IMG/VR virus record: IMGVR_UViG_3300002835_000007
Span: 141,932-205,931 of that record
Strand: one strand, 5' to 3'
Length of the DNA: 64,000 nt
Positions 41,625 through 64,000 of this stretch are shown here, piece by piece. Position 1 is the first letter of the stretch. Every line of letters begins with the position of its first letter. Under the pieces are notes generated by a model. It had not been told where the DNA came from and made no database searches. It saw only the letters and a program-made list of their open reading frames with translations. A program made the position numbers and the translations under genes.

Positions 41625-42941
41625 ATGTTAAATAAAAAAATAAATCAATTTTCTGCGGATACAGCTATTCAAGGTACTGAATTAATCCTAATAATGGATT
41701 CTGGGACAACCAAAAATATGGTTGTTGATGACTTAAAAGAGTATGTGTTAAGTGGTGCGACAGATGTGTTCGTAACTGGTGGTACTTATTCTAATAGTAC
41801 CATTACATTTAGTAACAATACTGGTGGAACATTTAGTGTTTCTGGTATTAGCAGTAGTTCAAATATTTCTGATTCAATTTATACTGTTAATGATAATTTA
41901 AATGCCAATAATACAACAACCGCAACTACATCTGTTATGGTTTATGGTGTTAATGTGTTTACTGGTGTAACATCAACTAATTATGCAACTAAATTGCCGC
42001 AACCAGTTACTGGAAAAAGTGTAAAAGTAATTAATAATGGTTCTACATTATTACATATATTTCCTTCTAATATTGGTGGTCAAGTAAATAATTTACCAAT
42101 AAACACACCAGCGGTTATACCACCAGATGGTAATTTATATGAATTCATTTGTATTAAGAATCCATTACCAGGTGCGTGGACGTTTTCAACACCAGCAACT
42201 GGTCAATATGATAGTGGTGAAATAACAATTTCAATTAGTGCATTAACTAAAAGTGGGTCCAATCCAGTGATAACTGCATATAATTCTAATTATGTTGGGG
42301 CTGGTCCTAATTTTAATAGTACTAATTGGGGTTACGATGGTAAAAATAAATCAGCTATTTTAAGTAGTTATTATAATGGTGATTATTATTTAGCATTCAG
42401 ACCAGAAACACCATGGAAAGGTATTAGTAAGATTAAAATTTATACTAATTTAATTGATAGTAATAGAACAAGAAGTACTTTAGCTAGGGTAGCGGCTGGT
42501 GGTGAATCTGATTATTATTCACCATATGATGGTTCTATATTAAATACTAGACTTGGTGCGGCTAATGGTGAATTACTTAGAGTGTATACGAATAAAGTTA
42601 TATCTGGTGTTGCCGTATCTGCCAGTACAATATACACATCAGCAAATATCGGGGACGCTGGGACATTATGGGGTGAAAAAGTAGCTAATACTGATTCATA
42701 TTCAAATGTTAGTTTAGGTACTGAAGGTGGTACATTTATAGGGAATAAACCATTAAACTCTACAGCTTATCCTTATTATCAAACTTGGGATATTTCTGAT
42801 AATGAAATAAACACTGGTGATATTGTTGATGTATTTTATTCGTCTTATATTTCATTTCAAATACAACCATTTGCTTACGACTTTAATTATGGTACAATAC
42901 CAGATTTTAAATTCAGATTTATAATCGAATACTACCAATAA
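41625..42941 (+). CDS. putative virion fibre/decoration protein
   Basis: KKINQF..D N-terminus; VTGGTY shaft module; late motif at 41603. Confidence 0.6.
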   Translation: MLNKKINQFSADTAIQGTELILIMDSGTTKNMVVDDLKEYVLSGATDVFVTGGTYSNSTITFSNNTGGTFSVSGISSSSNISDSIYTVNDNLNANNTTTATTSVMVYGVNVFTGVTSTNYATKLPQPVTGKSVKVINNGSTLLHIFPSNIGGQVNNLPINTPAVIPPDGNLYEFICIKNPLPGAWTFSTPATGQYDSGEITISISALTKSGSNPVITAYNSNYVGAGPNFNSTNWGYDGKNKSAILSSYYNGDYYLAFRPETPWKGISKIKIYTNLIDSNRTRSTLARVAAGGESDYYSPYDGSILNTRLGAANGELLRVYTNKVISGVAVSASTIYTSANIGDAGTLWGEKVANTDSYSNVSLGTEGGTFIGNKPLNSTAYPYYQTWDISDNEINTGDIVDVFYSSYISFQIQPFAYDFNYGTIPDFKFRFIIEYYQ

Positions 42942-42977
42942 ACAATAAGTTTAAATATTTATATAAAAACTAATAAA

Positions 42978-45900
42978 ATGATAATTCTAAGAATATTAAA
43001 TAGCCCTTATGCTAACGATTTAACCAGAAATGCTACATTGTCACATCAAGATGTTGATAGTAACTTTATATACCTAAAAGGTCATATAATTTATGAAGCT
43101 GAAAATAGTGGAGGATTAGTTACATTAAAAAAATATAACGGAGAAACTATTACTTTTAGTGCTTCAACTGGTGGTTCTGGTGGCTCTGGTGGTTCTGATT
43201 CATATTGGACATCTGGTTCAACTGGTGTTGGTTCAATAAAAGCTATTAACACTACTGGGTTAGACGCAACTGGAACTAATGCTGTAGCAATAAATCATGC
43301 AACATTGGCTAGTGGACAATTTTCTTTAGCTACTGGTGTTGACACTATTGCTAGTGGTGCCTCTTCTTCTACATTTGGTGTTGAGACTATTGCTGGAGGT
43401 GTTGCTTCACATGCAGAGGGTTTTCAAACAAGAGCATTTGGTTATGCGTCACATTCAGAAGGAAACGATACAATAGCAAGAGGTGATTATTCACATGCTG
43501 AAGGTTGGTCGTCTATGGCAACTGGTGCTACATCACATGCAGAAGGTGAATTAACTAAAGCATATGGTTCAGCGTCACATGCTGAAGGTGGTAGTACTAT
43601 TGCGAGTGGTATCGCTTCACATGCTGAAGGTAACGGAACAATTGCAAGTGGTGATATGTCACATGCTGAAGGTACTGGTACATTAGCAAGTGGTGATAGT
43701 TCACATGCTGGTGGTGAAGGTGTGGGTTCTAATTATGTTGTAGCTGATGGTATTTCTTCATTCGCCCATCAATTTGTAAGTGGTAATGGACAATTTGGAA
43801 CTGGCAATTATGGTACATATGCTAATTATTCAGCTATTTTAGGTGGTAAAGACCATTATATGTATTCTGGTTCTACTAGTGGTGTTATAATGGGTGGTAA
43901 TGGTCATATATTATTTGGTATAAGTATTAACTCTGGTATTTTTGGTGGTGATGCTAATTTATTGATTGATACGTTTAACGGTGTTGCTTTGGGTGGTACT
44001 GAAAATGGTACAATACAAGCGGACAGTTCAGCTGTTATTGGTGGTTATAATAACCTTATCGATGCATTTGCATATTATGGTCCAGCATATGGATTTATTG
44101 CTGGTGGTTCAAATAACAAAATACAAACTGGTGGTGGTGTTTCTGATGAATCAAGTGCTATTATTGGAGGTAATGGAAACACTATCATAGGTGATAATCA
44201 ATATAACGGTATATATAACTCTTTTGACTCTACACTTACAAATCAAGATACATCAACAATTATTGGTTCATATGAATCTTATATAAATGATAATACTGGT
44301 GGTTTAGAATCAAATAACAATGCTATTATAAACGCTTCAAATTCATATATTAATGGTTATGGTATATCACATGCAAACATTTTAGGTGGTGCAAATAATA
44401 GTATTTATCAAGCTGTTGATGGAGTAAATCAACCTAATTATACATCAATACTTAATGGTTACGGTAACCAAATTTTAGATAGTGATACAGCTGTTATTTT
44501 TAATGGATTTACAAACTCTATTAGTGGTAATAGTAAACAATCAACAATATTAAATGGACAATTTCACTCAATAACTTCATCTAAATTTGCAGCTATTATT
44601 GGTGGTAATTCAAACGAAATGGCTGATAGTGATGGTTCTGCTCTTATTGGTGGTTCTGATAACAGTATTTTATCTGATAGCAATCCAGCATTTACGAGAT
44701 ATTACAACGCTATTATTGGTGGTACTGGTAACACTATTAATAATTCTGAATTATCATTTATCTTAGGTGGTTATAAAAATGTTATCCCATACGGTAAAAT
44801 AGGCGTTGTTATTTTAGGTGGTGAAAATATAACTGGTTCAACAAACAATACAGTTTATGTTCAAAGATTAAATATTAAAAATGCTGCTAATGACAATACT
44901 ACAACTAGATTTTTAACATTAGATGCTAATAATAACATTGCTTATAGGAATTTAAGTAGTATTAGTGGTTCTAGTAGTGGTTCAACTGGTGGTGATACAT
45001 TATGGGCTTCTGGTACGACTGGTATTGGTTCAATAAAGGCTATTAATAGTACTGGGTTAGATGCAAATGGTGATTATGCTGTTGCGATAAACAATTCAAC
45101 AATGGCTGATGGTGATAATTCATTTGCTGCTGGTTATTCAACGTGGGCTAGAGGTATTTCTTCAATGTCGGTTGGACAAAATACTGAATCGTTTGGTGAT
45201 TATTCATTTGCTGGTGGTCATAACACAATTGCTACTGGTAATTTATCTTTTATATGGTCTACAGAATCTACCGTTACTGGTATTAGAAGTGCGGTTATTG
45301 GTGGTTCTTATATAAATGGGTTAAGTGCTGATACGGTTTATGTACCATATTTAAATGTCCAGTCTGCAACAACTGATAATTCAATAACTACAATGTTAGT
45401 TAGAAATGGTGATGGTTTTGTTAGAACTAGACAGATACCTCTAGATGTTTTTGTGACTGGTGGTACTTATAATGCTGGTGCAGCTACGTTTAGAAATAAC
45501 ACTGGTGGTACATTTAGTGTAACTGGTTTTAAAACAAGTGATACGTTTGTAACTGGAGGTACATATAGTAATTTTACTGGAACAGCTATATTTACTAATA
45601 ATAGTGGTAGTACATTTAATGTAACTGGATTCAGTACTGGTTCAACATCTGTGACTGGGTTTACATATTTAAATAATAATTTAACTGTTAAACAATCTAG
45701 TGGTGATTTATCTGTTAATATCAATACAATGACTGGTTTAACAATAAATGGTAATTTAACTTATACTGGTCAAGCAAATAACCCAGTTTATACTGCTGGT
45801 ACTGTAACTGCTACACATACACCAAACTGGAATAATAGCAACATACAACATGTTATATTATCAGCTGCAACGACAACAATTGCAAATGGTACTAACGTTA

Positions 45901-46094
45901 AGAATGGTGCGGTTTATACTATGATTGTTAAACAAAATGCGACTGGTTCTAGAGTGGTAACTTGGGGTTCTCAGTACAAATGGCAATCTGGTATTGCACC
46001 AATATTAACATCAATATCAAATGCTGTTGATATATTTACATTTATAAGTGACGGTACAGACTTGTATGGTCTAATAGCAAAAGATTTTAGATAA
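42978..46094 (+). CDS. second tail fibre/adhesin with SHAEG and GGxxN repeats
   Basis: L(S/T)H..VDSNF N-terminus; 7 HAEG/HSEG repeats; C-terminal phage-fibre domain IVKQ..TGSR.VTW..YKW..P..T..AVDIF. Confidence 0.8.
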   Translation: MIILRILNSPYANDLTRNATLSHQDVDSNFIYLKGHIIYEAENSGGLVTLKKYNGETITFSASTGGSGGSGGSDSYWTSGSTGVGSIKAINTTGLDATGTNAVAINHATLASGQFSLATGVDTIASGASSSTFGVETIAGGVASHAEGFQTRAFGYASHSEGNDTIARGDYSHAEGWSSMATGATSHAEGELTKAYGSASHAEGGSTIASGIASHAEGNGTIASGDMSHAEGTGTLASGDSSHAGGEGVGSNYVVADGISSFAHQFVSGNGQFGTGNYGTYANYSAILGGKDHYMYSGSTSGVIMGGNGHILFGISINSGIFGGDANLLIDTFNGVALGGTENGTIQADSSAVIGGYNNLIDAFAYYGPAYGFIAGGSNNKIQTGGGVSDESSAIIGGNGNTIIGDNQYNGIYNSFDSTLTNQDTSTIIGSYESYINDNTGGLESNNNAIINASNSYINGYGISHANILGGANNSIYQAVDGVNQPNYTSILNGYGNQILDSDTAVIFNGFTNSISGNSKQSTILNGQFHSITSSKFAAIIGGNSNEMADSDGSALIGGSDNSILSDSNPAFTRYYNAIIGGTGNTINNSELSFILGGYKNVIPYGKIGVVILGGENITGSTNNTVYVQRLNIKNAANDNTTTRFLTLDANNNIAYRNLSSISGSSSGSTGGDTLWASGTTGIGSIKAINSTGLDANGDYAVAINNSTMADGDNSFAAGYSTWARGISSMSVGQNTESFGDYSFAGGHNTIATGNLSFIWSTESTVTGIRSAVIGGSYINGLSADTVYVPYLNVQSATTDNSITTMLVRNGDGFVRTRQIPLDVFVTGGTYNAGAATFRNNTGGTFSVTGFKTSDTFVTGGTYSNFTGTAIFTNNSGSTFNVTGFSTGSTSVTGFTYLNNNLTVKQSSGDLSVNINTMTGLTINGNLTYTGQANNPVYTAGTVTATHTPNWNNSNIQHVILSAATTTIANGTNVKNGAVYTMIVKQNATGSRVVTWGSQYKWQSGIAPILTSISNAVDIFTFISDGTDLYGLIAKDFR
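43407..43715 (+). repeat. 42-nt-period coding repeat (SHAEG, 7 copies plus SHAGG)
   Basis: Same unit as 35535-36257. Confidence 0.85.
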
Positions 46095-46939
46095 TGTTTA
46101 ACATACCATTTAATTATAGAGAAGGATATAGTTCTGGTGACCCGATACCAGTTTTTGGGTCAGCCAAGGCTATTCTATGGGTTGATTCTTTAAAAGGTGT
46201 TTTTAATGGTTTTCCATATAGTGCAGCAACTTTAAATAATACTAATATTAGATTATGGCAAGACCAAACAATATATGGTAATAATTTAACTGCTAACACT
46301 TCGACTTCACCTACTTATTCAGCAACTACATTCTCACCTAGTGGTACGTCATCTTCATTCCCATTCATGAGATTTTCCGATATTAATTCAGAACGTTTAG
46401 AAATACCTAGAACAGCTAGTTTGCAAGCAATTAGTACTGGGTTTACATTGTTTTTTGTTATGAGAAAAAACCCATTAAGAACGTGGAGTGCTGGTAACCC
46501 TATAATTGAATACAACGCTGCTTGGTCTAGTGAAAGCGAGGGATTTGGTGTTGATGCTGATGCTGGTCCAAATTTTATGCAGTTATGGTATTATAATAAT
46601 TCATTTAATGTTACAACCGCTGAAATACCATGGGGTAGTGGTGGTGTTAATGAAGACCATTTTTATTATTATACGTTTAGAATGAGTGCTGGTACTATTA
46701 CTGCTTATGCTGGGTCAACACTTAGAGATACAATAGTTGCTGTAGGTTCTAATAAAACAATGAAGACTGTTTCAAGTAACGGTAAGTTTTCTATTGCTGG
46801 TGGTTATAATGGTACTACATTTGCTCAAGCAACTGCTTTAGATGTTGCAGAGGTTTTACTCTACGATGGTGCTGTACCTAATGCTGGTTTAACAACTGTG
46901 TGGAATTATTTTAAATCTAAATATGGATTTATCGGTTAA
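46094..46939 (+). CDS. LamG/concanavalin-A-like virion protein
   Basis: LW.D, W.DQ..GNN, FTLFFV, VAEVLLYD..L..YF..KYG. Confidence 0.75.
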   Translation: MFNIPFNYREGYSSGDPIPVFGSAKAILWVDSLKGVFNGFPYSAATLNNTNIRLWQDQTIYGNNLTANTSTSPTYSATTFSPSGTSSSFPFMRFSDINSERLEIPRTASLQAISTGFTLFFVMRKNPLRTWSAGNPIIEYNAAWSSESEGFGVDADAGPNFMQLWYYNNSFNVTTAEIPWGSGGVNEDHFYYYTFRMSAGTITAYAGSTLRDTIVAVGSNKTMKTVSSNGKFSIAGGYNGTTFAQATALDVAEVLLYDGAVPNAGLTTVWNYFKSKYGFIG

Positions 46940-46956
46940 AAAAGATATTTATAATT

Positions 46957-47331
46957 ATGGAATTCTATATTAATAAAAACGCAACATTACCAAAATTAAA
47001 ACTTGAACTAATCAAGGATGGTAGAAATGATTTTAACAAATTTCACGATAAAATCCAAAATGCTAATATAACATTTACTATGTCTGATGTTGTTACTGGT
47101 GTTAAACGTGTTGCATGTAGTAATGCGTCTATTGAACAAGTTTTACCTAAAGGTGACTGTAATTGTGATGAGTTTTATTTAGTTTATCAATTTACATCAA
47201 AACAAACGTCTATTGGTGGTAGATACATTGGTCAATTTGAAATTGAATTTTTAGATGGTAGTGGAACGCTTATTGTTCCTATCAGAGAAGAACTATTTAT
47301 AAATGTTTTAGAGGGGTCAATTAAAAAATAA
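46957..47331 (+). CDS. BppU-like Ig-fold baseplate/structural protein
   Basis: FYINKNATLP.L..EL, ITFTM, YQF..T...G.Y.GQFEI.F.DG. Confidence 0.6.
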   Translation: MEFYINKNATLPKLKLELIKDGRNDFNKFHDKIQNANITFTMSDVVTGVKRVACSNASIEQVLPKGDCNCDEFYLVYQFTSKQTSIGGRYIGQFEIEFLDGSGTLIVPIREELFINVLEGSIKK

Positions 47332-47332
47332 C

Positions 47333-47428
47333 TTGACAATCTGAAATTAATTTCGTAACTTTGTAATGTACAAAGTTAAAAAAAATGTTGTATTATTTCT
47401 TGAATTGTATTACTTTTGTTTGTATATT
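47333..47428 (+). promoter_or_regulatory. tandem host-type promoters for DNA polymerase
   Basis: TTGACA-N17-TAACTTTG (47333-47363); TTG-N20-TACTTTTG (47388-47418); TTGAAT-N17-TATATT (47400-47428). Confidence 0.7.
47356..47378. repeat. perfect 10-bp inverted repeat over the -10 element
   Basis: TAACTTTGTA-ATG-TACAAAGTTA. Confidence 0.8.
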
Positions 47429-47444
47429 AATGAAAAAATAATTT

Positions 47445-54631: not shown

Positions 54632-54667
54632 TTTTATTTGTTTATTTAAACAATGTTATAATATTTA

Positions 54668-54696
54668 AATATAATAAATTTTTAAATAAAAATCAA
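54668..54696 (-). promoter_or_regulatory. host-type promoter TTGATT-N17-TATATT
   Basis: Upstream of the helicase; back-to-back with late motif 54724-54732 on plus. Confidence 0.65.
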
Positions 54697-54741
54697 TAGT
54701 TGTGATTATTATTTATTAGATTAATATTTATAAATAAAGAT

Positions 54742-55260
54742 ATGGGAAATAACAAAATAACACCGATTACTAGGATAAATAAATTCTTCTCAAATGAGGA
54801 TTTTAATCTAGAAATTTCTATGGGTAGAGAGGCCGTAGAAGGTGATGGTAATTTTACTATAATTTTATATAGTGTTGATAGAGAAATGTCAGCATCTGAT
54901 AATGTATATGGTGAAGCACCTATTGATGGTATTAAGTTTTTACCGCCAGTTGAACTTAAAGTGGCTCCGATGATGGCCGCAGCAGAAAATAAAGCATACA
55001 ATGAAGGTATGTTAAGATATTTACAAGATGGTCAATTTACATTTGGTATTTATGATAGTCAATTAAGTGAATTAGATACAAATATTTATTATGGTGATTA
55101 TATAGGTTACCCAGTAAGCGAAACGGAAATAAGATACTTTAGTGTTGTTAATGACGGTATTAAAAATTATGATAATCAACACACAATAATGGGATACAAA
55201 GCAGCATATAGAACGATTGTTTGTGCAGCAGTTGATTCTAGCGAATTTAATGGAATGTAA
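54742..55260 (+). CDS. head completion/neck protein (gp14-like)
   Basis: G..IILY.V......NVYGE..KF..P motif; late motif upstream. Confidence 0.6.
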   Translation: MGNNKITPITRINKFFSNEDFNLEISMGREAVEGDGNFTIILYSVDREMSASDNVYGEAPIDGIKFLPPVELKVAPMMAAAENKAYNEGMLRYLQDGQFTFGIYDSQLSELDTNIYYGDYIGYPVSETEIRYFSVVNDGIKNYDNQHTIMGYKAAYRTIVCAAVDSSEFNGM

Positions 55261-55266
55261 TAAACA

Positions 55267-56325
55267 ATGAGTGTACCTAAAGGATTTAAAACGGGAATAA
55301 AAATTACAAATCAGAAAGTAGGTCCAGAAAGACGACAAGAAATTTTGGATGGGATTGCTGATAATGGTACCTTTTTACCTAGAGGTGTCCTAGAGGAAGA
55401 TATGGACCAAACTTTCTTAGAGTTTATAAACAGCGATAAAAGGATATCTTTAAATATCGATGGTAAGAAAGTTCCAGTTATATTTTTAACTATTCAAAGA
55501 TGGACAGAGTTTAGCAAAACATGGCAATTTTCCGATAAATTTAAAAACATTGAATTACCATTTATTACAATTGTTAGAAAACCAGATATTCAACAAGGTC
55601 AAAACCAAGCTGGGTTATGGAATATTCCAGTAAATAGAACTTATACATATATGAAGGTTCCTACTTGGGACGGTGTTAGACGTGGTGTTGATGTTTATAA
55701 AGTACCGCAACCTACTTCAGTTGATATGTCATATGAAGTGAGATTGTTTACTAACAGAATGAAAGATTTGAATGAGTTTAATAGATTAATTCAAAGAGCT
55801 TTTCAATCTAGACAGTGTTACATAAACGTAAATGGCCACCCTATGCCGCTGCATTTAGAGTCAATCGGTGATGAAAGTAATATTGATGATTTTGAAAATA
55901 GAAGATTTTATGTTCAATTGTTTGAAATGAAGTTGTTAGGTTATATTTTAGATGAAAATGATTATGAAATAGTGCCAACAATAAACAGACAAATGGTTAC
56001 TTTAGAAATAGCTACTGACAAAATATACAATGACGTTATATTTGAACCAGTTAAAAGAGGTAATTCCCTTACTTTTAACTTTTTATTCAAATCAAAATCT
56101 GAACCTAGATTTTCATTTGTATCACAATATGGTGCTTATATAACGCAATTAAAAGATGTTGTGGACATAAATAGGATAGTCATTTCAATTAATGGTTCTG
56201 TTGTTTTTGATGGCACAGTTTTAACCACACCAATTACTATAAATGGTAGTGATACTGTTGTAATAAGAATTTATAAAAACTTCTATTCAAATGGAAGTTT
56301 TAGATTAATAGGAAGTACATTGTAA
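55267..56325 (+). CDS. tail completion/terminator protein (gp15-like)
   Basis: VPVIF..RW, LPFITI.R, P..VD..YEV.LFT. Confidence 0.6.
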   Translation: MSVPKGFKTGIKITNQKVGPERRQEILDGIADNGTFLPRGVLEEDMDQTFLEFINSDKRISLNIDGKKVPVIFLTIQRWTEFSKTWQFSDKFKNIELPFITIVRKPDIQQGQNQAGLWNIPVNRTYTYMKVPTWDGVRRGVDVYKVPQPTSVDMSYEVRLFTNRMKDLNEFNRLIQRAFQSRQCYINVNGHPMPLHLESIGDESNIDDFENRRFYVQLFEMKLLGYILDENDYEIVPTINRQMVTLEIATDKIYNDVIFEPVKRGNSLTFNFLFKSKSEPRFSFVSQYGAYITQLKDVVDINRIVISINGSVVFDGTVLTTPITINGSDTVVIRIYKNFYSNGSFRLIGSTL

Positions 56326-57131
56326 TGGGATATCTGTATAATTATGACGTAAATGAAACTTTTATTATTGAAGCTTTATCATTAAGTGGTGATATACCTA
56401 CAGTTTCAGCATGTACCGCAATTTTTAGTAATTCATTCGCTTCATGTAGCGGTGATACCCAAATTATTATGGGTACTGGAACTATAATATTTGATGGTAA
56501 TGTTAGTGGTGAAAATATTAGTGGAAATACTTTTAACGCTGCAACATATTATAGTGGTAGTACAAATCTTTTTGACATAATAATATCGACTACTTCAAAT
56601 CAATCAATAACTGGGGGTACATTTAATAATAATACAGATACTTTAACTTTATTTAAGGGTAATGGTAGTTCTTTAAATATAACTGGCGTTACTGATTATT
56701 ATATTACTGGTGGTACATTTAATAAAACAACAAAAATTTTAAGTTACACTAGAAATGATAACCAAAAAATAGATGTTGAACTACCAGTTAGAACTTTTTT
56801 AAGTAATACTGGTCAAACGATATCTAACCAAACATTAATTATTGATACAGTAACTGCAATTAAAGATAATTCTAACACATTTTTTGTTTCATATGTTAAC
56901 GCATACAATAGTTCTACTAACTATGGGTTCTGGAAAAGAACATTGGCATTAAATAAAACATCTGGTGTGTTAACAATAATAGGTGAAAATTCTGATTTTG
57001 ATAGAATTTCTAGTGGAATGACACCAAACTCAATTGTTTACTCTGCAAATAGTGGTAATTTATCAATTATTATTAGTGGTGAAACAGCAAAAAATTATAC
57101 ATGGTCTTCAAATTGGGAGATTATAAGCTAA
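56325..57131 (+). CDS. putative fibre/decoration protein
   Basis: S/T/G/N-rich; ITGGTF modules; SAC-x10-CSGDTQI. Confidence 0.6.
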   Translation: MGYLYNYDVNETFIIEALSLSGDIPTVSACTAIFSNSFASCSGDTQIIMGTGTIIFDGNVSGENISGNTFNAATYYSGSTNLFDIIISTTSNQSITGGTFNNNTDTLTLFKGNGSSLNITGVTDYYITGGTFNKTTKILSYTRNDNQKIDVELPVRTFLSNTGQTISNQTLIIDTVTAIKDNSNTFFVSYVNAYNSSTNYGFWKRTLALNKTSGVLTIIGENSDFDRISSGMTPNSIVYSANSGNLSIIISGETAKNYTWSSNWEIIS

Positions 57132-57159
57132 GGTTTAATATTTATAAATAAATAAGTAG

Positions 57160-57807
57160 ATGGCAACTAACATTAGGTCGATATCAATTGGTGTAATTCT
57201 TATACAAAATGGGAATGGTGTTCCAACACACATTTCCTCTAAGGGTACATTGTTCGTAAATTTAGATACAGCAATATTATACATCAATAAAGATGGTATT
57301 GCTACATGGGAAACAAATAACAGTGGGGGTTTTACTTTAACTCAAAACCAATTTAATGCTATTACTGGTGCTACATCACCTAGTAGTACTAATGTCTTTG
57401 CTACTATATCTGATATAGTAAGTTCTGCTTTTACTGGTGGTACTGTAAATGGTTTAACAACCTTTACTGCTGGTTTATCAGCAACTACAATAAGTGCTTG
57501 TACATCAGTACAGACAAATAAATTAATTAGTTGTAGTGGTGACACTCAAATTAGTTTATCTAGTGGTCAAACAATTTTTAACACTAATCTAACACCAAAC
57601 TTAGACGCTACTATTGATGTTGGTACTTCATCTAAAAGATTTAGAGATATAAATACTGTTAGTGGAACATCTACTGTTTGGACTTCAACTATTAAAGTGA
57701 CAACACCTACATTAGATTTAGGTAATGATTCTCTAGGTAATTTAAGACAAATCACAGCAAATAATTCAATAATACAAGATGACGCTCTTTTGGGTGGAAC
57801 TTATTAA
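57160..57807 (+). CDS. putative short fibre protein
   Basis: GVP..KG.L..N.....LY..W motif; SAC-x10-CSGDTQI; ends LGGTY; late motif 57138. Confidence 0.6.
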   Translation: MATNIRSISIGVILIQNGNGVPTHISSKGTLFVNLDTAILYINKDGIATWETNNSGGFTLTQNQFNAITGATSPSSTNVFATISDIVSSAFTGGTVNGLTTFTAGLSATTISACTSVQTNKLISCSGDTQISLSSGQTIFNTNLTPNLDATIDVGTSSKRFRDINTVSGTSTVWTSTIKVTTPTLDLGNDSLGNLRQITANNSIIQDDALLGGTY

Positions 57808-57840
57808 AAAAATAATATATTTATATAAAAACAATTAAAA

Positions 57841-59250
57841 ATGGCAAATAGAAATACTAGGTTTATACTAAAAAATAATGCAAATTCGTCAGCTCCTTTT
57901 TCTGGTGCTACGCTATATGCTGGTGAACCAATTGTTAATACCGCTGCTGGTATTATGATGTTATCTGGTGTAACTACTGGTACAAATGACTGGGTTCCAG
58001 CTGGTACTGGTGGTAACGCAAACTTTTTTGAAGTAGGTTCTAATCTTTATAATTTAAAAATTAGAAATCAGATTACATCATATGGTGGTCTTACTAACTT
58101 AACTGGTAAATTTTTATCTGGTACTACAAATGGTTTTGTTGTTGCTGATATTAGTACAATTTCTGGTGTTGATACTTACGTAACTGGATTAACTTACTCA
58201 AATAACATTTTAACCGTTAAACAAAACCAAGGTCAATCTGATTTATCGGTTCTTGTTAATACAATGACTGGGTTGACGGTTAATGGTACTCTATCTGCCA
58301 CTACATTAAATTTAACAAATGGTACTGTAAGTAGTGCTGCTAGTAGTGCTAATGATATCGTTAATTATAGTAGTTTAACTTCTTATACACAAAATAACGA
58401 CATTTATGTTACAGCTGGTACTATTTCTTATACTGGTCCTAGTGGTTCGTTACTATTGAATAGAAGAAATACAACAGACGTAACGATTACTGGGTTAAGC
58501 GACATTTATGTAACTGGTGGTACATTTAATGCTGGTACAATTACATTAACTAATAATAATAATAGTTCTTTTAGTGTTACTGGTTTAGCTACAACTGATA
58601 CATTTGTTACTGGATTTACTTATTCACCTACAACAAATACGTTTACAATTAAACAAAATCAAGGTCAAGCTGATTTACCAATTCAATTTACTACAGTTTC
58701 TGGTTTAACATTATCTAATTTAACAGCTGGTAGAGTTGTTTATGTTGGTACTAATGGTTTGTTAACAGACGAAGCTGGGTTTACTTACAACGCTTCTACA
58801 AATGCATTTAGTGTACCTTCTGATGGTTCAGTTAGTGTTGGTACTGGTGGGTTAAGTGTTGCTGGTGATGCAGTTGTTCAAGGTTCATTAACAGTATTTG
58901 GTCCTTCCATTTCAGCATTTACTAGTCAATTATATGTAGAAGATGATAACATCACACTTAACTATAACCCTACTGGAAATACTACGTCTACTTCGTTAGG
59001 TGCTGGTTGGACAATTCAAGATGGTTCTGGTATTGCAAACACAGCAACAACTTTAAATATTGGTTTATCATACACAAACGCTAATTTAAGCCCTAACACT
59101 GAATATACTTCTTCAACTGGTAATGCGAATAGAAACATATTCACACAAGTTGGTGATATTATAATTAGAAATACTAACTATGACAAAAACTCACCAAATG
59201 GTGTGAGAGTATTGGCTGAAAACGATGTTTTAGATGGCGGTACTTATTAA
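57841..59250 (+). CDS. fibre protein with Mtd-N/hyaluronidase-N-like N-terminus
   Basis: FILK..P..L.AGE..NTA.G; four VTG shaft modules; ends DGGTY; late motif 57817. Confidence 0.7.
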   Translation: MANRNTRFILKNNANSSAPFSGATLYAGEPIVNTAAGIMMLSGVTTGTNDWVPAGTGGNANFFEVGSNLYNLKIRNQITSYGGLTNLTGKFLSGTTNGFVVADISTISGVDTYVTGLTYSNNILTVKQNQGQSDLSVLVNTMTGLTVNGTLSATTLNLTNGTVSSAASSANDIVNYSSLTSYTQNNDIYVTAGTISYTGPSGSLLLNRRNTTDVTITGLSDIYVTGGTFNAGTITLTNNNNSSFSVTGLATTDTFVTGFTYSPTTNTFTIKQNQGQADLPIQFTTVSGLTLSNLTAGRVVYVGTNGLLTDEAGFTYNASTNAFSVPSDGSVSVGTGGLSVAGDAVVQGSLTVFGPSISAFTSQLYVEDDNITLNYNPTGNTTSTSLGAGWTIQDGSGIANTATTLNIGLSYTNANLSPNTEYTSSTGNANRNIFTQVGDIIIRNTNYDKNSPNGVRVLAENDVLDGGTY

Positions 59251-59279
59251 AAGATTTACTTTAAAAATATCATAATTAT

Positions 59280-59316
59280 AATATGCACAATTTAACGATT
59301 GTGCATATTTATTTTA
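59280..59316 (+). terminator. 12-bp hairpin terminator overlapping a late motif
   Basis: AATATGCACAAT-TTAACG-ATTGTGCATATT then TATTTT; ATATTTAT at 59305-59312. Confidence 0.6.
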
Positions 59317-59380
59317 TAGAGGTTACATAACCCATACACATAACTCTTTATAGAGATTTTTAAGACATACCATTATATAC

Positions 59381-61276
59381 ATGGCAAATAGAAATAATAC
59401 GTTTTTACTTAAACGTTCAAATGTTGCTGGAAAAGTACCAGCAGCTGGTGATTTAAGACTTGGTGAGTTAGCTATAAATACAGCTGACGGAATATTATAC
59501 GCTTCTGGAACGACAGCAAATTCAATCCTTCCAATAGGTTGGGATAGAGTTGCTAGGACTGGTGACACAATGACTGGTAGTTTATACGCACCTTCTATTT
59601 CTGCCACAACAATATCTGCTACTACATATCTTAACTTACCTTCATCAACGTTTACTGGTGGTACAGTAACTGGACCAACTAATTTTACAAACGGATTAAC
59701 AGCCAATACTATGAGTGCTACAACTTATTATGGTGATGGTTCTAATCTAACTGGTATATCGGCAGTAGCGACTGAATTCGTGGTTAATTGTCGTAACCAA
59801 AGTGGTTCAGATATGTATAGAGGTCAAGTAGTGTATATGAATGGGTCAACGGGGAATAAACCTACAATACTATTAGCACAAGCGAACTCTGAGATGACAT
59901 CAGCCAGAACATTTGGTGTGTTAAAAAATGATATTGCAAACAATGGTTTTGGTGATGTAGTAACAATTGGTTCAATAACTAATTTAGATACAAGAACTTC
60001 TGCAACACATCCATTCACAATAGATACTTTATCTGATGGACAAACAATTTATTTATCCCCAACTAATGCTGGTTATATTACAAATGTTAAACCATACGCA
60101 CCAAATCATTTAGTTTATATTGGTAAGGTAGTTAGAACTTCTCCAACTAATGGATATATAGAATATCAAATTCAAAATGGGTATGAATTAGATGAATTAC
60201 ACGATGTTAAAATAACTGGGGTAACATATGGTGATTTGTTAACATATTCAGCATATAATGGTAGTAATGTTTGGGTTAATAGTAAAACTCTTAATGGTTC
60301 TTATACTGTAACTGGTGATACAAGTGTTGGTGGTCAGATGAAAGCTACAACAGTTTCAGCTACAACATATTTTAATTTACCAATTGACATAAGAGTAACT
60401 GGGGGTACTTATAGTTCTGGAACTGCTACATTTACCAATAACACTGGTGGTACATTTACTGTAACTGGTTTCAGTACTGGTGGTGGTAGTACATTTAGTG
60501 GTGGGACTGTTACTGGTCCAACAACATTTACGAATGGTTTAACTGCAACAACTATTTCTGCTACTACATATTTTAATTTACCAATTGACATAAGAGTCAC
60601 TGGTGGTACTTATACTAGTGGTACCGCTACATTTACTAACAATACTGGTGGTACATTTACAGTAACTGGTTTCAGTACTGGTGGTGGTACTTTTACTGGT
60701 GGTACTGTAGCTGGAGCAACTTACTTCACTGGTGGTGTAAGTGCAAATACTTTAACAGCATCTGGAACTGGTCAAAATATTTTAACTGTTATTGGTTCTG
60801 GGAATAGTACGACATCACCTATATTTAGCGTTGTTGGTTCTCAAGGTGAGTTATTTAGTGTTACCGATTCATTAACTGGTTCATTATTTAGTGTCAACGA
60901 TATTTCTGGTTTACCAATTGTCGAGGTGTTCTCTGATAATACTATTTTAATGGGTAGTTATCAAGCACCTTCATTAAATACAACTGTAAAAGTAACACTT
61001 ACAGCTGGTACGAATACAGTTTATTCAATTCCAACAAGTGGTTATACTGGAGCATTCTTTGATTACACAGTGATAAGTTCAACTGGTGCTAGAGCTGGAA
61101 CAATTATGTCTATATGGAGTGGTACAACAGCACAATCTACTGATGTATCAACAAACGATATAGGAACAACAGCTGGTATTTCATTCTCAGTTGCAGTAGT
61201 TGGTAGTAATGCAGTGTTAAGTAGTTCAGCAACAACTGCTGGATGGACATTAAAAACAATTGTAAGAAGTATATAA
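59381..61276 (+). CDS. fibre protein with Mtd-N-like N-terminus and internal duplication
   Basis: LKRS...GKVP...L..GELAINTADG; central domain RGQVVY..A.A...FGV..G.V..G; VTGGTY modules. Confidence 0.75.
   Translation: MANRNNTFLLKRSNVAGKVPAAGDLRLGELAINTADGILYASGTTANSILPIGWDRVARTGDTMTGSLYAPSISATTISATTYLNLPSSTFTGGTVTGPTNFTNGLTANTMSATTYYGDGSNLTGISAVATEFVVNCRNQSGSDMYRGQVVYMNGSTGNKPTILLAQANSEMTSARTFGVLKNDIANNGFGDVVTIGSITNLDTRTSATHPFTIDTLSDGQTIYLSPTNAGYITNVKPYAPNHLVYIGKVVRTSPTNGYIEYQIQNGYELDELHDVKITGVTYGDLLTYSAYNGSNVWVNSKTLNGSYTVTGDTSVGGQMKATTVSATTYFNLPIDIRVTGGTYSSGTATFTNNTGGTFTVTGFSTGGGSTFSGGTVTGPTTFTNGLTATTISATTYFNLPIDIRVTGGTYTSGTATFTNNTGGTFTVTGFSTGGGTFTGGTVAGATYFTGGVSANTLTASGTGQNILTVIGSGNSTTSPIFSVVGSQGELFSVTDSLTGSLFSVNDISGLPIVEVFSDNTILMGSYQAPSLNTTVKVTLTAGTNTVYSIPTSGYTGAFFDYTVISSTGARAGTIMSIWSGTTAQSTDVSTNDIGTTAGISFSVAVVGSNAVLSSSATTAGWTLKTIVRSI
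60359..60715 (+). repeat. 201-nt-period direct duplication
   Basis: Units start at 60359 and 60560; long identical stretches (acatattttaatttaccaattgacataagagt). Confidence 0.85.
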
Positions 61277-61277
61277 C

Positions 61278-61973
61278 ATGGCATTTAGATATTCACCCAA
61301 AATAGTAACCGATGGTCTTATATTTAATGTAGACGCAGCTAATCCAAAATCATTTGTTAGTGGTGGTACAGTATGGAATGATTTAAGTAAATCTAGTGCT
61401 AAAGGTAGTTTAACAAACGGACCGACTTATAATTCAGCTAATGGTGGTAGTATAGTGTTTGATAATACTGATGATTTTATTGATTATGGTACAACTAATA
61501 TTATTTTACCAGTAAATATAACACTATCAGCTTGGATTTATCAAACAACTACAGCTGGTTATAAAAATATAATAACAAAGGAAGGTGCTACAAACGATTT
61601 AGATTATGGATTAACGACTTCTCCTAATGGTAATTTATATTTTTGGTTTCATAATGGTAGTTTTAGAATACATGAAACCACTACAAATATAATAAATTCA
61701 ATTAATACTTGGTATAATGTAGTTTCAGTATTTGATGATACTAATAATACTGTAAAAATGTATGTTAATGGTGTGTTAATATATAATCAACCAGAAAATA
61801 CTTCATTATTAGCACATTCTAATAGTAAATTATTTGTTGGTTGGAGAAATCAATTTATATCTGGTCAAGCGTTTAGTGGAAGAATTAGTCAAGTACAACT
61901 TTACAATAAAGCATTATCAGATTCTGAAGTTTTACAAAATTATAACACATTAAAATCAAGATTTGGGAAATAA
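61278..61973 (+). CDS. LamG/concanavalin-A-like protein 1
   Basis: GL...DA.N..S, W.DLS, NGG.IVFD, W.N.V, YNKALS..EVLQNYN. Confidence 0.85.
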   Translation: MAFRYSPKIVTDGLIFNVDAANPKSFVSGGTVWNDLSKSSAKGSLTNGPTYNSANGGSIVFDNTDDFIDYGTTNIILPVNITLSAWIYQTTTAGYKNIITKEGATNDLDYGLTTSPNGNLYFWFHNGSFRIHETTTNIINSINTWYNVVSVFDDTNNTVKMYVNGVLIYNQPENTSLLAHSNSKLFVGWRNQFISGQAFSGRISQVQLYNKALSDSEVLQNYNTLKSRFGK

Positions 61974-62638
61974 TGGCTGGAAGAATATCATATTACGGTG
62001 GAATAGTTAAAGATAGGTTAGTATTAGATTTAGATGCTGGTAAAAAAGCGTCTTATGTTAGTGGAAGTACAGCATGGAACGATATTAGCTACACAAATAA
62101 TAATTCTACATTGGTAAATAGTCCAGTGTTTAGTTCAAATAATGGTGGTACTATATTATTTGATGGTTTTGATGATTACGCAACAATTAATTCAGCAACA
62201 ACAATTAATTCAGCAACTGAGTTTACATTTAGTATTTGGGTTAAATCTAGTGTAATTGCTACTGAACAAATGTTATTTCAATGTGCTAATGCCTCTTTAA
62301 GTGGTTGGAATTTTGAAATTTATCAAAGTAAATTTTTACTTCAATGCTATCCTGGAGGTGGGTTTACACAAGCGACAACTGTAATGTCATCAAATGTTTG
62401 GTATAATCTAGTTGCTACATATAGTAATGGTAGTCAAGTATTTTATAATAATGGGTCTCAGAATGGTACCGCTAGTAGAACATTCACACCTTCATCAGCT
62501 CAAATAGTTATTGGTAAATGGATAAATCAACCATTACCATTAACTGGTAATATAGGTCAAATATTATTTTATAATAAAGCGTTATCAGCTACAGAAGTCT
62601 TACAAAACTATAATGCAACAAAAGGTAGATATTTATAA
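61973..62638 (+). CDS. LamG/concanavalin-A-like protein 2
   Basis: Paralogous to 61278; same terminal motifs. Confidence 0.85.
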   Translation: MAGRISYYGGIVKDRLVLDLDAGKKASYVSGSTAWNDISYTNNNSTLVNSPVFSSNNGGTILFDGFDDYATINSATTINSATEFTFSIWVKSSVIATEQMLFQCANASLSGWNFEIYQSKFLLQCYPGGGFTQATTVMSSNVWYNLVATYSNGSQVFYNNGSQNGTASRTFTPSSAQIVIGKWINQPLPLTGNIGQILFYNKALSATEVLQNYNATKGRYL

Positions 62639-62641
62639 ATT

Positions 62642-62914
62642 ATGGAAACAAATTTAAATGATTACGAAAACAGAAAATTCATGATATTTAATGTATCTGA
62701 ATTAGTACTTATTGATTTTACTCAAGTACAAGAAACATCAATTGATACAGTTAGAAAATCAATCGATGGTACCAAAACATTTGTTAAATGGGATTCAGTT
62801 GAAATACCTTCATCGGTATTAGATTTAACAACAAGTGAAGGACCATATACTTATGATGAAATATCAATAATATTAAATGGCCCAGAATGGACTGATGATA
62901 GACCAATGCCATGA
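62642..62914 (+). CDS. small acidic hypothetical protein
   Basis: 90 aa; own late motif at 62629-62637; ATGA overlap with the next gene. Confidence 0.7.
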   Translation: METNLNDYENRKFMIFNVSELVLIDFTQVQETSIDTVRKSIDGTKTFVKWDSVEIPSSVLDLTTSEGPYTYDEISIILNGPEWTDDRPMP

Positions 62915-63606
62915 GTACAGCTAAAAATTATAGAGGACCTAACATTATTAAAGATGGATTGGTGTTGTATTTAGATGTTGCTACTAATAATTCATATAAT
63001 AGATATATTTCAACTGCAACTTGGAGAGATATTTCTGGCAATGGAAATAATGGAACATTAGTAAATGGTCCTACATTTAGTAGTTCTAATGGTGGTAATA
63101 TAGTATTTGATGGTACAGATGACTACTTTAATATCGCTAATCAAATATCAGATGTTATGAACACAATCGATATTTGGCTTAATATGAAATCAACATCACC
63201 TTGCCCTATTTTATATTATGGTTTAGACTCATTTGATTCAAATGTTTGGACATGGGGTATTGCAGTGTTCCCTTCATCAACACATGGTTTTAATGAAGGA
63301 CCATTAAGTTACCCAACAACAAGTTTATATACTGATACAGTAGATTTAAACGTATGGAAAAATTTCACATTAGTCAGAAATGATAATGGTAATGTTAAAT
63401 TATATAAAAACGGTGTTTTAGTTGGTACTAAAGTTGGTGGTGGAACTACTAGTGTTAGAAATGTTAGCGATAGATTATATATCGGTAAAGCTGGGTCAAC
63501 ATATGGTAATTATAGTATAGGTTCTATTAAGATTTATAATAAAGCTTTAACAGCAACAGAAGTCTTGCAAAACTATAATGCAACAAAATCTAGATTTGGA
63601 TTATAG
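62911..63606 (+). CDS. LamG/concanavalin-A-like protein 3
   Basis: Paralogous to 61278 and 61973. Confidence 0.85.
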   Translation: MSTAKNYRGPNIIKDGLVLYLDVATNNSYNRYISTATWRDISGNGNNGTLVNGPTFSSSNGGNIVFDGTDDYFNIANQISDVMNTIDIWLNMKSTSPCPILYYGLDSFDSNVWTWGIAVFPSSTHGFNEGPLSYPTTSLYTDTVDLNVWKNFTLVRNDNGNVKLYKNGVLVGTKVGGGTTSVRNVSDRLYIGKAGSTYGNYSIGSIKIYNKALTATEVLQNYNATKSRFGL

Positions 63607-63671
63607 TTTATTTTAACAACTCAATATATTTATTATAAAATAACATTACTGGATAGGGAAAGTAAAAAATT

Positions 63672-64000
63672 ATGCCGAACGAATTTAACATTAAGAATGG
63701 ATTTATATCCAATTCAGACTCTAGAATTATTGGTGGGTTAACCGCAACTACAATATCAGCAACAACATTATTTGGTAATGGTAGTAACCTTACTGGAATA
63801 CCTTCATTTACTGGTGGAACTATTGCTGGTGCAACTAGATTCACTGGCGGTTTAACCGCAAACACAATATCAGCAACAACATATTTTAATTTACCAACAG
63901 ACGTAAGTGTAACTGGTGCTACTTATTCTAATAACACATTTACATATACCAATAACACTGGTGGTACATTCAGCACATTGTTTAATACAATGACTGGATT
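63672..64000 (+). CDS. partial fibre protein running off the window (not in ORF track)
   Basis: Manual translation MPNEFNIKNGF...TISATTYFNLPTDVSVTGATYSNNTFTYTNNTGGTF..., open to the end; late motif 63626. Confidence 0.8.
   Translation, partial: MPNEFNIKNGFISNSDSRIIGGLTATTISATTLFGNGSNLTGIPSFTGGTIAGATRFTGGLTANTISATTYFNLPTDVSVTGATYSNNTFTYTNNTGGTFSTLFNTMTG

What the first reader, a model, noticed from the sequence alone, without database searches (positions are those of the whole stretch)
41625..64000. Modular fibre construction kit: one ~30-aa shaft module shared by at least six genes
Seen: D-x-x-VTG(G)T(Y/F)..T.TF(T)NN.GGTF.VTG recurs in 41625 (1 copy), 42978 (2-3), 56325 (2, diverged), 57841 (about 4), 59381 (2, a 201-nt duplication) and 63672 (at least 1). 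TISATTY(F/L)NLP and NTMTG linkers are also shared, with DNA identity between genes (acatattttaatttaccaa at about 60364, 60565 and 63879; aatacaatgactgg at about 45723, 58259 and 63984). The genes differ in N-terminal anchors and C-terminal heads. Inference: homologous shaft DNA lets heads be swapped by recombination, producing a multi-fibre virion without a DGR or invertase.
Basis: partly seen in the sequence, partly recalled or inferred. Interest (0 to 1): 0.6.

Follow-up and report, generated by a model that had tools for sequence, protein, structure and literature searches.

The report
Shuffled tail-fibre kit of a lake jumbo phage
A roughly 355-kb freshwater jumbo phage builds at least seven fibre genes from three short uncatalogued repeat modules, and comparison with about 80 related contigs shows whole binding domains swapped between phages with the breakpoints at those modules; this is a clean new example of a known way phages change host range.

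Summary
Profile searches find a ~30-aa module M1 (VTGGTY...TNNTGGTF.VTG), its homologous variant M3 (ending NT[MV]TGLT) and an unrelated module M2 (TGGTV...ISATTY.NLP) in genes at 41625, 42978, 56325, 57160, 57841, 59381 and 63672. They occur nowhere else in the 206-kb contig. No Pfam, NCBIfam, PHROG or PDB entry matches them, yet about 1,500 metagenomic protein clusters carry them.

DNA identity between the genes of this genome is what codon bias plus amino-acid conservation predicts, and exact matches are at most 24 nt. So there is no sign of exchange among the genome's own genes.

Exchange between phages is clear. In related contigs the same non-repeat domains recur in many combinations, always separated by modules. 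An internal domain of the 59381 gene is 100% identical in DNA over about 660 nt to a contig whose flanks are 76-93% identical or unalignable, and both edges lie in M2 modules. The head of the same gene is 95-100% identical in phages with 73-80% identical backbones.

A near-identical genome (99.98%) has only the core of one lectin-like (LamG) gene replaced.

The principle is known from T-even fibres. The module family, the phage group and the recency of the swaps are new.

The parts
34746..39665 (+). Gene A, 1639 aa. A long fibre with about 16 YadA-head-like 14-aa repeats (SHAEG motif, 42-nt period, 35448-36341) and a C-terminal Peptidase_S74 chaperone domain. It lies outside the finding but shares its repeat block with gene D.
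   Evidence: Pfam PF13884 at 1.2e-17 and PF05658; PHROG tail-fibre families. Repeat family D1.
39665..41560 (+). Gene B, 631 aa. A conserved protein of unknown function that marks the left border of the first variable fibre slot.
   Evidence: 23 related loci at 40-100% amino-acid identity. No family hit.
41625..42941 (+). Gene C, 438 aa: a short N-terminal anchor, one M1 (41760-41849) and a 363-aa head of unknown fold.
   Evidence: Apart from a second contig of the same phage (L062), no homologue in the 22 other loci found with gene B.
42978..46094 (+). Gene D, 1038 aa: a conserved N-terminal anchor (aa 1-60), YadA-head-like repeats (43284-43757), M1 (45441-45530), M1 (45540-45632), M3 (45651-45758) and a head matching PHROG 9017 'tail fiber'.
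   Evidence: In relatives the same N-terminal anchor and head occur in different architectures.
46094..46939 (+). Gene E, 281 aa, weakly similar to the LamG paralogues.
   Evidence: blastp against gene L, 25% identity over 137 aa. The L063 homologue carries an extra M2 and M1 tail.
46957..47331 (+). Gene F, 124 aa. A conserved protein that marks the right border of the first variable slot. In four relatives B is followed directly by F.
   Evidence: loci L079-L082.
55267..56325 (+). Gene G, 352 aa. A conserved protein just upstream of the second fibre cluster, used here as the synteny anchor.
   Evidence: 51 related IMG/VR loci at 47-100% amino-acid identity.
56325..57131 (+). Gene H, 268 aa: anchor N2, M2 (56475-56555), M1 (56604-56690), M1 (56691-56780) and a head.
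   Evidence: In relatives the same N2 anchor carries architectures of 218 to 1588 aa.
57160..57807 (+). Gene I, 215 aa: an anchor, one M2 (57433-57516) and a head.
   Evidence: (D12).
57841..59250 (+). Gene J, 469 aa: anchor N0, M3 (58180-58293), M1 (58399-58497), M1 (58501-58587), M3 (58606-58722) and head C1.
   Evidence: In relatives the anchor and head are conserved, but the module string varies (3113, 113, 11131, 31113, 13, 331131 and others).
59381..61276 (+). Gene K, 631 aa: anchor N0, M2 (59558-59641), M2 (59654-59734), internal domain I7 (59735-60304), M2 (60305-60382), M1 (60383-60472), M2 (60497-60583), M1 (60584-60673), M2 (60695-60775) and head C8 (60776-61273). It contains the 201-nt M2+M1 duplication.
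   Evidence: Homotrimer model for aa 300-631: score 0.93 against best control 0.00.
59735..60304 (+). Cassette I7, the internal domain of K. It is 100% identical in DNA to L086 over about 59669-60330 and 96-100% identical to L031, L085 and L087, although the backbones are 72-85% identical.
   Evidence: Found at 94-100% amino-acid identity in at least 13 protein clusters of 523-1081 aa. The fold model resembles phage capsid-decoration proteins and the phi29 head-fibre base.
60776..61273 (+). Cassette C8, the head of K. It is 95-100% identical in DNA to L047/L058 and L018, whose backbones are 73-80% identical. In L018 and L010 it sits in a different gene.
61278..63606 (+). Three LamG (Laminin_G_3) paralogues, L (61278-61973), M (61973-62638) and O (62911-63606), plus the 90-aa gene N. 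The LamG proteins have conserved N-terminal (aa 11-70) and C-terminal (aa 201-230) ends and a variable core. The core of O (63134-63531) is replaced in the 99.98%-identical contig L011.
   Evidence: Pfam PF13385..
63672..63998 (+). Gene P, cut by the contig end: M2 (63711-63776), M2 (63810-63896) and an M1/M3 hybrid (63909-63998).

Best explanation
The window holds two hypervariable fibre-gene islands (41625-46939 and 56325 to the contig end) of an uncultivated freshwater jumbo phage. Its genome is about 355 kb, and relatives encode a contractile-tail sheath.

Each fibre protein has a conserved N-terminal anchor, then beta-strand repeat modules (M1, M3, M2) alternating with globular domains, then a C-terminal head. 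The modules act as shaft or linker segments. Because they are conserved in sequence across genes and across phages, they are also the places where recombination between related phages joins different domains in frame. The recombination is presumed to happen during co-infection.

The result is a shared pool of receptor-binding cassettes that is reassorted across the lineage. The cassettes include internal domains, heads, module copy number and the cores of the adjacent LamG genes.

Shown here: the modules; the combinatorial architectures; near-identical cassettes in diverged backbones with edges at the modules; and a copy-number polymorphism of the M2+M1 unit.

Inferred: that the proteins are tail fibres on one virion; that the crossover is driven by homology or microhomology; and that the swaps change host range.
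For: Modules.

Family size: the M2+M1 profile hits 1,529 cluster representatives, 989 of them at 1e-10 or better, with up to 20 copies per protein. No catalogued family matches.

Architectures: in 51 loci found with anchor G, plus L008-L010, the same domain clusters (I7, I9, I11, C8, C4, C6, C20, C26) occur in different combinations and under different anchors, always separated by modules. The B-F slot holds between 0 and about 6 fibre genes.

Recent transfer: against L086, DNA is 100% identical over 59669-60330, the left flank is 76-93% identical and the right flank is unalignable. The edges lie in M2 at 59654-59734 and at 60305-60382. Similar blocks occur with L031 (96-100% against a backbone of about 76-79%), L085 (92% against 72-75%, ending at 60367) and L047/L018 (head 95-100% against 73-80%).

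Junction positions: in 13 proteins sharing I7 at 94% identity or more, all right-hand junctions lie in M2c, within 4 aa of it, or in the next modules. Nine left-hand junctions lie in M2a or within 5 aa of the end of M2b. Across all loci, homology-break ends fall inside a module in 46% of cases against 29% for random positions, and none of 500 randomisations reached the observed value.

Unit polymorphism: P0070, in two independent assemblies (L088, L089), lacks one 201-nt unit in a 98-99.8% identical background.

No homogenisation within the genome.

Fibre nature: S74 chaperone, YadA-like repeats and PHROG tail-fibre hits. tblastn hits of K and D to annotated tail fibres. Homotrimer model: score 0.93 against best control 0.00, runs agree in at least 45% of their contacts, partner pLDDT at least 74; the mark was reached by 20 of 30 solved pairs and 1 of 23 single chains in the calibration, which holds only roughly here because three copies and my own alignment were used.

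Natural populations: at least 15 lake or freshwater runs from 2016-2024 hold half or more of the locus. Their contigs run on into unlike sequence at 58506, 60479, 60513, 60629, 60672 (modules), 60173-60219 (end of I7) and 61430, 61946, 63036, 63081, 63581 (LamG ends).
Against: No experiment links these proteins to the virion or to host range.

The trimer model's confident interface starts only at about K aa 436. The shaft role and the fold of M1 and M2 are therefore not shown. The AF2 monomer model is all-beta but has pLDDT 44.7.

Junctions next to a domain are partly inevitable, because modules flank every domain. The HSP-end statistic uses non-independent loci and includes repeat-to-repeat alignments.

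Identity runs between modules are short, at most 24 nt between genes of this genome. Classical homologous recombination would be inefficient on such runs. No recombinase was found in the 58% of the genome that is held.

All relatives are metagenome contigs. Assemblers can join strains across a shared identical cassette, so some specific combinations may be chimeric.
Confidence: 0.72

Rival explanations
1. Selection filter rather than homology. Recombination is illegitimate and lands anywhere, but only chimeras joined in the repeat linkers fold into working trimers, so only those are seen. On this view the modules are structural spacers, not recombination substrates.
For: Exact identity between modules is short, at most 24 nt between genes. 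Codon-level identity is at the level codon bias predicts. Some junctions lie 3-5 aa outside a module, at the domain edge. The identity-block edges against L047 and L018 are gradual.
Against: Both edges of the 100%-identical I7 block fall inside M2 copies, where the two partners are still alignable. The loss or gain of the 201-nt unit is exactly in register. [quoted passage not shown] The two explanations are not exclusive.
Confidence: 0.3
2. Gene conversion driven by homing endonucleases. Double-strand breaks made by mobile endonucleases next to the fibre genes start the repair that copies a neighbour's cassette. The modules only set where the conversion tract ends.
For: Relatives carry an Endonuclease_7 gene (L010 5066-5449) or a GIY-YIG/NUMOD3 gene (L085 5040-5810) exactly between the J-like and K-like genes. 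The 92% block shared with L085 starts at 59246, next to that insertion point.
Against: This window has no such gene in the J-K spacer (59251-59380). Most relatives with swapped cassettes show none (loci). The I7 and head blocks have edges far from that spacer.
Confidence: 0.12
3. Assembly artefact. The mosaics are chimeric contigs made when short-read assemblers cross from one strain to another through shared repeats or shared identical cassettes.
For: All relatives are metagenome contigs. Many end inside this locus, including the window's own contig and L011, L047, L019 and L050. Logan contigs are fragmented here, and 36-59% of what was laid runs on into unlike sequence.
Against: A chimera through a cassette still requires the identical cassette to exist in both strains, so the sharing itself is real. 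The same alleles recur in independent samples and assemblers: K in the window and L011, and P0070 in an ENA and a Logan assembly. Module repeats within a genome are only 76-89% identical with exact runs of at most 32 nt, too short to mislead k=141 assemblies.
Confidence: 0.1
4. Programmed variation within one genome, as in a shufflon, silent-cassette or DGR-type system, switches heads during infection cycles.
For: There are many direct repeats and several paralogous LamG genes with conserved ends. One near-identical genome differs only in one LamG core.
Against: The 206-kb contig has no reverse transcriptase or serine recombinase. All modules are direct repeats inside expressed genes, so recombination in cis would delete genes rather than swap heads. 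The replacement LamG core has no copy in the contig. Module copies are not homogenised within the genome. The differences are wholesale, not adenine-specific.
Confidence: 0.03

Closest known systems
T-even (T4 superfamily) long-tail-fibre locus: gp37 fibrous motifs and gp38 adhesins with glycine-rich motifs separating hypervariable segments (Tetart et al. 1996, 1998; Trojet et al. 2011, PMC3157838)
   Same: Conserved short motifs alternate with variable receptor-binding segments. [quoted passage not shown] Swapping of interchangeable fibrous motifs was proposed to explain the locus's plasticity. A small adhesin gene follows the fibre gene.
   Different: There is no sequence relationship (no Pfam or PHROG hit). 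The modules here are 30-aa beta repeats that occur up to 20 times per protein. Whole globular domains inside the fibre are the cassettes. The adjacent small genes are LamG lectin-like proteins, not gp38.
Streptococcus thermophilus phage antireceptor: variable region VR2 and domains separated by collagen-like repeats (Duplessis and Moineau 2001, as cited in PMC5601072)
   Same: Repeat DNA separates distinct domains of the host-range protein, and the variable region follows the host rather than the phage group.
   Different: Those are Gly-X-Y collagen repeats in one gene of small siphophages. Here there are three non-collagen modules across at least seven genes of a jumbo phage.
General RBP modularity and horizontal transfer (E. 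coli tailspikes, PMC10408124; Alteromonas phages sharing tail fibres, PMC10579305)
   Same: N-terminal anchors are conserved and distal parts are exchanged between distantly related phages (titles and abstracts only).
   Different: Those cases exchange whole C-terminal or whole-gene modules. Here exchange units are also internal domains and repeat copy number, with repeat modules marking the edges.
Fibre shafts built from short pseudo-repeats (adenovirus triple beta-spiral, T4 gp12/gp34/gp37), from my own knowledge
   Same: Short beta-strand repeats with conserved Gly and Thr residues, strung in variable number ahead of a trimeric head.
   Different: Not tested. No sequence match to any PDB chain, and the M1/M2 fold was not predicted with confidence.

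Membership tests
Phage tail fibre / receptor-binding protein (generic) | Homology to known tail-fibre or tailspike proteins or domains | tested here: met
   Gene A: Peptidase_S74 at 1.2e-17 and PHROG tail-fibre families. Gene D head: PHROG 9017. K and D segments hit annotated tail fibres or spikes of Pseudomonas phage Rollin, Flavobacterium phage immuto and others. The repeat modules themselves hit nothing.
Phage tail fibre / receptor-binding protein (generic) | Homotrimeric assembly | tested here: inconclusive
   Model of K aa 300-631 in three copies: score 0.93 against best control 0.00, runs agree in at least 45% of contacts, partner pLDDT at least 74. In the calibration 20 of 30 solved pairs and 1 of 23 single chains reached the mark, which holds only roughly here. 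This is a prediction only. The confident interface covers the last M2 and the head, not the M1/M2 shaft.
Phage tail fibre / receptor-binding protein (generic) | Presence on the virion and binding to a host receptor | not testable with these tools
   The phage is uncultivated and the host is unknown.
T-even gp37/gp38-type mosaic adhesin locus | Sequence homology to gp37, gp38 or their motifs | tested here: not met
   No Pfam, PHROG or NCBIfam hit of that kind. It works like this system but is not a member.
T-even gp37/gp38-type mosaic adhesin locus | Variable segments flanked by conserved motifs, with exchange junctions at those motifs | tested here: met
Diversity-generating retroelement target | Reverse transcriptase plus template/variable repeat pair with adenine-specific changes | tested here: not met
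   No RVT_1 hit in the 206-kb contig. The variants differ by wholesale replacement. The genome is only about 58% covered.
Invertase-driven fibre switching (Mu Gin / P1 Cin type) | Serine recombinase and inverted repeats flanking alternative fibre ends | tested here: not met
   No resolvase hit. The modules are direct repeats on one strand. The genome is only about 58% covered.
Laminin_G_3 (PF13385) lectin-like proteins | Pfam match above the gathering score | tested here: met
   L scores 84 bits, M 66 bits and O 48 bits against a cut-off of 27.6.

The most novel reading that the evidence does not exclude
M1, M2 and M3 are an undescribed fibre-shaft repeat family that works as universal in-frame junction sites. 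Through them, a lake-wide community of jumbo phages whose backbones differ by 15-28% shares one pool of receptor-binding cassettes. Single domains sweep through that pool at 100% DNA identity. Host-range evolution in this lineage would then be a population-level combinatorial process acting on internal fibre domains and LamG cores, and not only on fibre tips.
Probability: 0.45. Interest if true: 0.65.

Novelty: new member of a known kind. Interest (0 to 1): 0.5.

Why it matters
Tail-fibre mosaicism is the main route by which phages change host range. Most well-resolved cases come from cultured coliphages and dairy phages.

Here an uncultivated freshwater jumbo-phage lineage gives an unusually clean natural record. 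Cassettes identical at the DNA level sit in backbones that differ by a quarter of their bases, and the edges are resolved to individual 30-aa modules.

The module family has about 1,500 protein clusters and no Pfam, PHROG or PDB entry. It would be worth defining as a domain family. That would improve annotation of fibre genes in aquatic viromes. It would also show where contigs break, since many contigs, including this one, end in this locus.

The conserved modules also point to natural in-frame junction sites for fibre domains. This could be tested once a host is found.

Tried and rejected
Near-DNA search of the locus against GenBank phages found no match. tblastn of the K shaft (aa 300-480) against GenBank phages also found none, though the low-complexity filter may hide it.

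Pfam at E up to 1, NCBIfam, PHROGs and a PDB profile search for the modules gave nothing meaningful.

The ESM Atlas look-alike search for the K shaft returned only viral hypothetical proteins, with TM scores of 0.33 or less.

The AF2 monomer model of K aa 300-631 had pLDDT 44.7 and was not usable for fold search.

The idea that DNA identity between the genome's own fibre genes shows gene conversion was rejected by the codon test and by comparing modules with those of other genomes.

DGR, invertase and RecA were searched for in the contig and not found. No tRNA genes were found in the window.

The joints reported by read laying (for example 58530 to 60690, which would fuse J to K) have only 20 nt on the shorter side and come from contigs. 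I do not count them as evidence.

The two complete relatives (362,532 and 353,143 bp, with terminal repeats) have few or no strong M2+M1 units. Richness in modules is therefore specific to a lineage, not to the family.

The first literature search was too general to be useful.

Full report
CONTEXT

The window is the last 64 kb of a 205,931-bp linear IMG/VR viral contig that CheckV rates 58% complete. GC content is about 30%. Two relatives found through a conserved neighbour gene are complete genomes with terminal repeats, 362,532 and 353,143 bp long. This is therefore a jumbo phage of about 355 kb.

Relatives encode a 950-aa protein with a weak Phage_sheath_1 hit just after the fibre genes, which suggests a contractile tail. 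The locus is held by at least 15 lake-water or freshwater metagenome runs from 2016 to 2024. GenBank phages have no near-DNA match. The family-B DNA polymerase at 47445-51311 is only 24% identical to those of Salinibacter phages. The host is unknown. Bacteroidota is a guess, based on those hits and on hits to Flavobacterium phage fibres.

THE OBSERVATION

A regex and an HMM built from seven seed copies confirm the D-x-x-VTGGTY...TNNTGGTF.VTG module, called M1 here, in genes 41625, 42978, 57841, 59381 and 63672. Per-copy E-values range from 1e-13 to 3e-19. Nothing else in the six-frame translation of the whole contig scores below E 0.1.

Profiles iterated on relatives resolve three modules:
- M1, about 30 aa.
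- M3, about 37 aa, with an M1-like start and an NT[MV]TGLT.NG tail.
- M2, about 29 aa: TGGTV.G.T.FT.GL.A.TISATTY.NLP.

M1 and M3 are homologous (hhalign probability 98%). M2 is unrelated to them.

Writing each module by its number, the architectures in the window are:
- C (41625): anchor-1-head.
- D (42978): anchor, YadA-like repeats, 1-1-3-head.
- H (56325): anchor-2-1-1-head.
- I (57160): anchor-2-head.
- J (57841): anchor-3-1-1-3-head.
- K (59381): anchor-2-2-[domain I7]-2-1-2-1-2-head.
- P (63672): 2-2-(1/3 hybrid), cut by the contig end.

WITHIN THE GENOME: NO SIGN OF EXCHANGE

At residues conserved between two M1 copies in different genes, the number of identical codons equals what the codon usage of these genes predicts: 13 observed against 12.0 expected, 12 against 11.5, and 16 against 13.7. 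Only the tandem duplication inside K exceeds expectation, at 23 against 17.2.

Exact matches between genes are 14-24 nt long, against 11-15 nt between unrelated genes. M1 copies in different genes of this genome are 76-78% identical in DNA, while their best matches in other phages are 82-88% identical. The paralogous modules are therefore old and are not being homogenised.

BETWEEN PHAGES: EXTENSIVE AND RECENT EXCHANGE

Using the conserved 352-aa gene G (55267-56325) as anchor, I fetched 51 related loci at 47-100% amino-acid identity. Three more contigs came from protein look-ups. I annotated every ORF with the three profiles and clustered the non-repeat segments.

The anchors stay put while everything distal to them is reassorted.
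- The K-position gene appears in at least 13 architectures. K's head, C8, also occurs behind a different N-terminus (L008), in a separate third gene (L018, L010), and behind other internal domains (L047).
- The H-position anchor carries proteins from 218 to 1588 aa.
- J keeps its anchor and head but varies its module string.
- The other island, between conserved genes B and F, holds between 0 and about 6 fibre genes in 23 relatives.

Identity profiles show that some swaps are very recent.
- Against L086, DNA is 100% identical from about 59669 to 60330. The left flank is 76-93% identical and the right flank decays to noise. The two edges lie in M2 copies at 59654-59734 and 60305-60382.
- The same I7 block is 96-100% identical to L031 (backbone about 76-79%). 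Against L085, whose backbone is 72-75% identical, the wider block 59246-60367 is 92% identical and its I7 core reaches 96-100%. L087 is 100% identical over 59749-60259.
- I7 occurs at 94-100% amino-acid identity in at least 13 protein clusters of 523-1081 aa. In all 13 the right-hand junction lies in the next M2, within 4 aa of it, or in the following modules. Nine left-hand junctions lie in M2a or within 5 aa of the end of M2b.
- The head C8 (60812-61290) is 95-100% identical to L047, L058 and L018, whose backbones are 73-80% identical. In L018 the block runs about 25 codons into the following LamG gene.
- P0070, found in two independent assemblies, is K minus exactly one 201-nt M2+M1 unit, in a 98-99.8% identical background.

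Across all loci, homology-break ends fall inside a module in 46% of cases, against 29% for random positions in the same genes. None of 500 randomisations reached the observed value. The loci are related and repeat-to-repeat alignments are included, so this figure is only supportive.

Logan contigs from four lake runs that match the window then run on into unlike sequence at module positions, at the end of I7 and at the LamG ends. These are contigs rather than reads, which makes this weak support.

LamG GENES

Genes L, M and O are Laminin_G_3 proteins with conserved N- and C-terminal ends and a variable core. Contig L011 is 99.98% identical to the window over 17.9 kb. Only the core of O (63134-63531) is replaced there by an unrelated LamG core, after which identity returns to 100%. 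The replacement has no copy in the 206-kb contig. The same logic of conserved ends and an exchangeable middle therefore applies to these genes.

STRUCTURE

A three-copy model of K aa 300-631 passed the control test. The score was 0.93 against a best control of 0.00. The runs agree in at least 45% of their contacts and the partner pLDDT is at least 74. In the calibration, 20 of 30 solved pairs and 1 of 23 single chains reached the mark, and that calibration holds only roughly here.

The confident interface runs from about K aa 436 to the C-terminus, that is, the last M2 plus the head. The AF2 monomer model is all-beta, with three strands per M1, but has pLDDT 44.7. The shaft role of M1 and M2 therefore remains an inference.

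The I7 model (pLDDT 67) resembles phage capsid-decoration proteins and the base of the phi29 head fibre (best E 3e-4, TM by target 0.53-0.65). This is a lead only.

MECHANISM

Most likely, the fibres are trimers in which conserved repeat modules space out the globular binding domains. When related phages co-infect a cell, recombination within these conserved modules produces in-frame chimeras.

Shown: the cassette sharing and where its edges lie. Inferred: the dependence on homology, the location on the virion and the effect on host range.

The main rival is selection for foldable junctions after illegitimate recombination, and the two are not exclusive. Homing-endonuclease genes sit between the J-like and K-like genes in two relatives and could start such events. 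Assembly chimerism could inflate the number of combinations, but it cannot create the shared identical cassettes. No RT, serine recombinase or RecA was found in the part of the genome that is held.

COMPARISON AND NOVELTY

[quoted passage not shown] It also matches the domains separated by collagen-like repeats in S. thermophilus phage antireceptors (PMC5601072). There is no sequence relationship to either.

What is new is the module family: about 1,529 clusters at 50% identity, with up to 20 copies per protein and proteins up to 2,673 aa, and no Pfam, NCBIfam, PHROG or PDB match. The phage lineage, the internal-domain cassettes and the recency of the swaps are also new.

Verdict: a new member of a known kind, of moderate interest.

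Noticed in passing
window 63134-63531 (gene O, 62911-63606) against L011 17868-18304: A contig 99.98% identical over 17.9 kb differs only by wholesale replacement of the core of one LamG gene. The conserved 5' and 3' ends of the gene are identical. The replacement core has no copy in the 206-kb contig.
   Followed up: partly
L010 5066-5449; L085 5040-5810: Relatives carry homing-endonuclease-like genes (Endonuclease_7; GIY-YIG/NUMOD3) exactly between the J-like and K-like fibre genes. The window has only a 130-nt spacer there (59251-59380).
   Followed up: no
window 35448-36341 and 43284-43757: Genes A and D share a second repeat system: 14-aa SHAEG-type units with a 42-nt period and a weak YadA_head match, about 16 copies in A and 6 in D. 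Gene A ends in a Peptidase_S74 intramolecular-chaperone domain.
   Followed up: partly
window 64000 (contig end); L011, L047, L019, L038, L050 ends: The window's contig and several related IMG/VR contigs end inside or just after the module-bearing fibre genes. This suggests that assemblies break here because of repeats and strain heterogeneity.
   Followed up: no
window 59735-60304 (K aa 119-308): The internal cassette I7 is a very widespread domain: 2,683 proteins at E 1e-8 or better, many on 25-60-kb phage contigs. Its medium-confidence model resembles trimeric capsid-decoration proteins and the phi29 head-fibre base.
   Followed up: partly
window 60344-60745; L088 and L089: The 201-nt M2+M1 tandem duplication in gene K is polymorphic. 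Two independent assemblies carry the single-unit allele in a 98-99.8% identical background.
   Followed up: yes
window 57841-57990 and 59381-59560: Genes J and K start with the same type of N-terminal anchor (MANRN...LKR...GE(L/P)(A/I).NT..G). From memory it looks like the Mtd_N type of fibre N-terminus, but Pfam gave no hit. Two different fibres may therefore dock at the same kind of site.
   Followed up: no
window 47445-51311: The family-B DNA polymerase of 1288 aa has a long acidic C-terminal extension and sits between the two fibre islands. Its closest GenBank phage relatives are Salinibacter phages, at 24% identity.
   Followed up: no
window 58530 to 60690 (read laying joints, runs X10 and X14): Contigs from two lake runs suggest a form that joins an M1 of gene J to the distal shaft of gene K, skipping 2159 nt. 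Only 20 nt lie on the shorter side, so this may be a repeat artefact.
   Followed up: no
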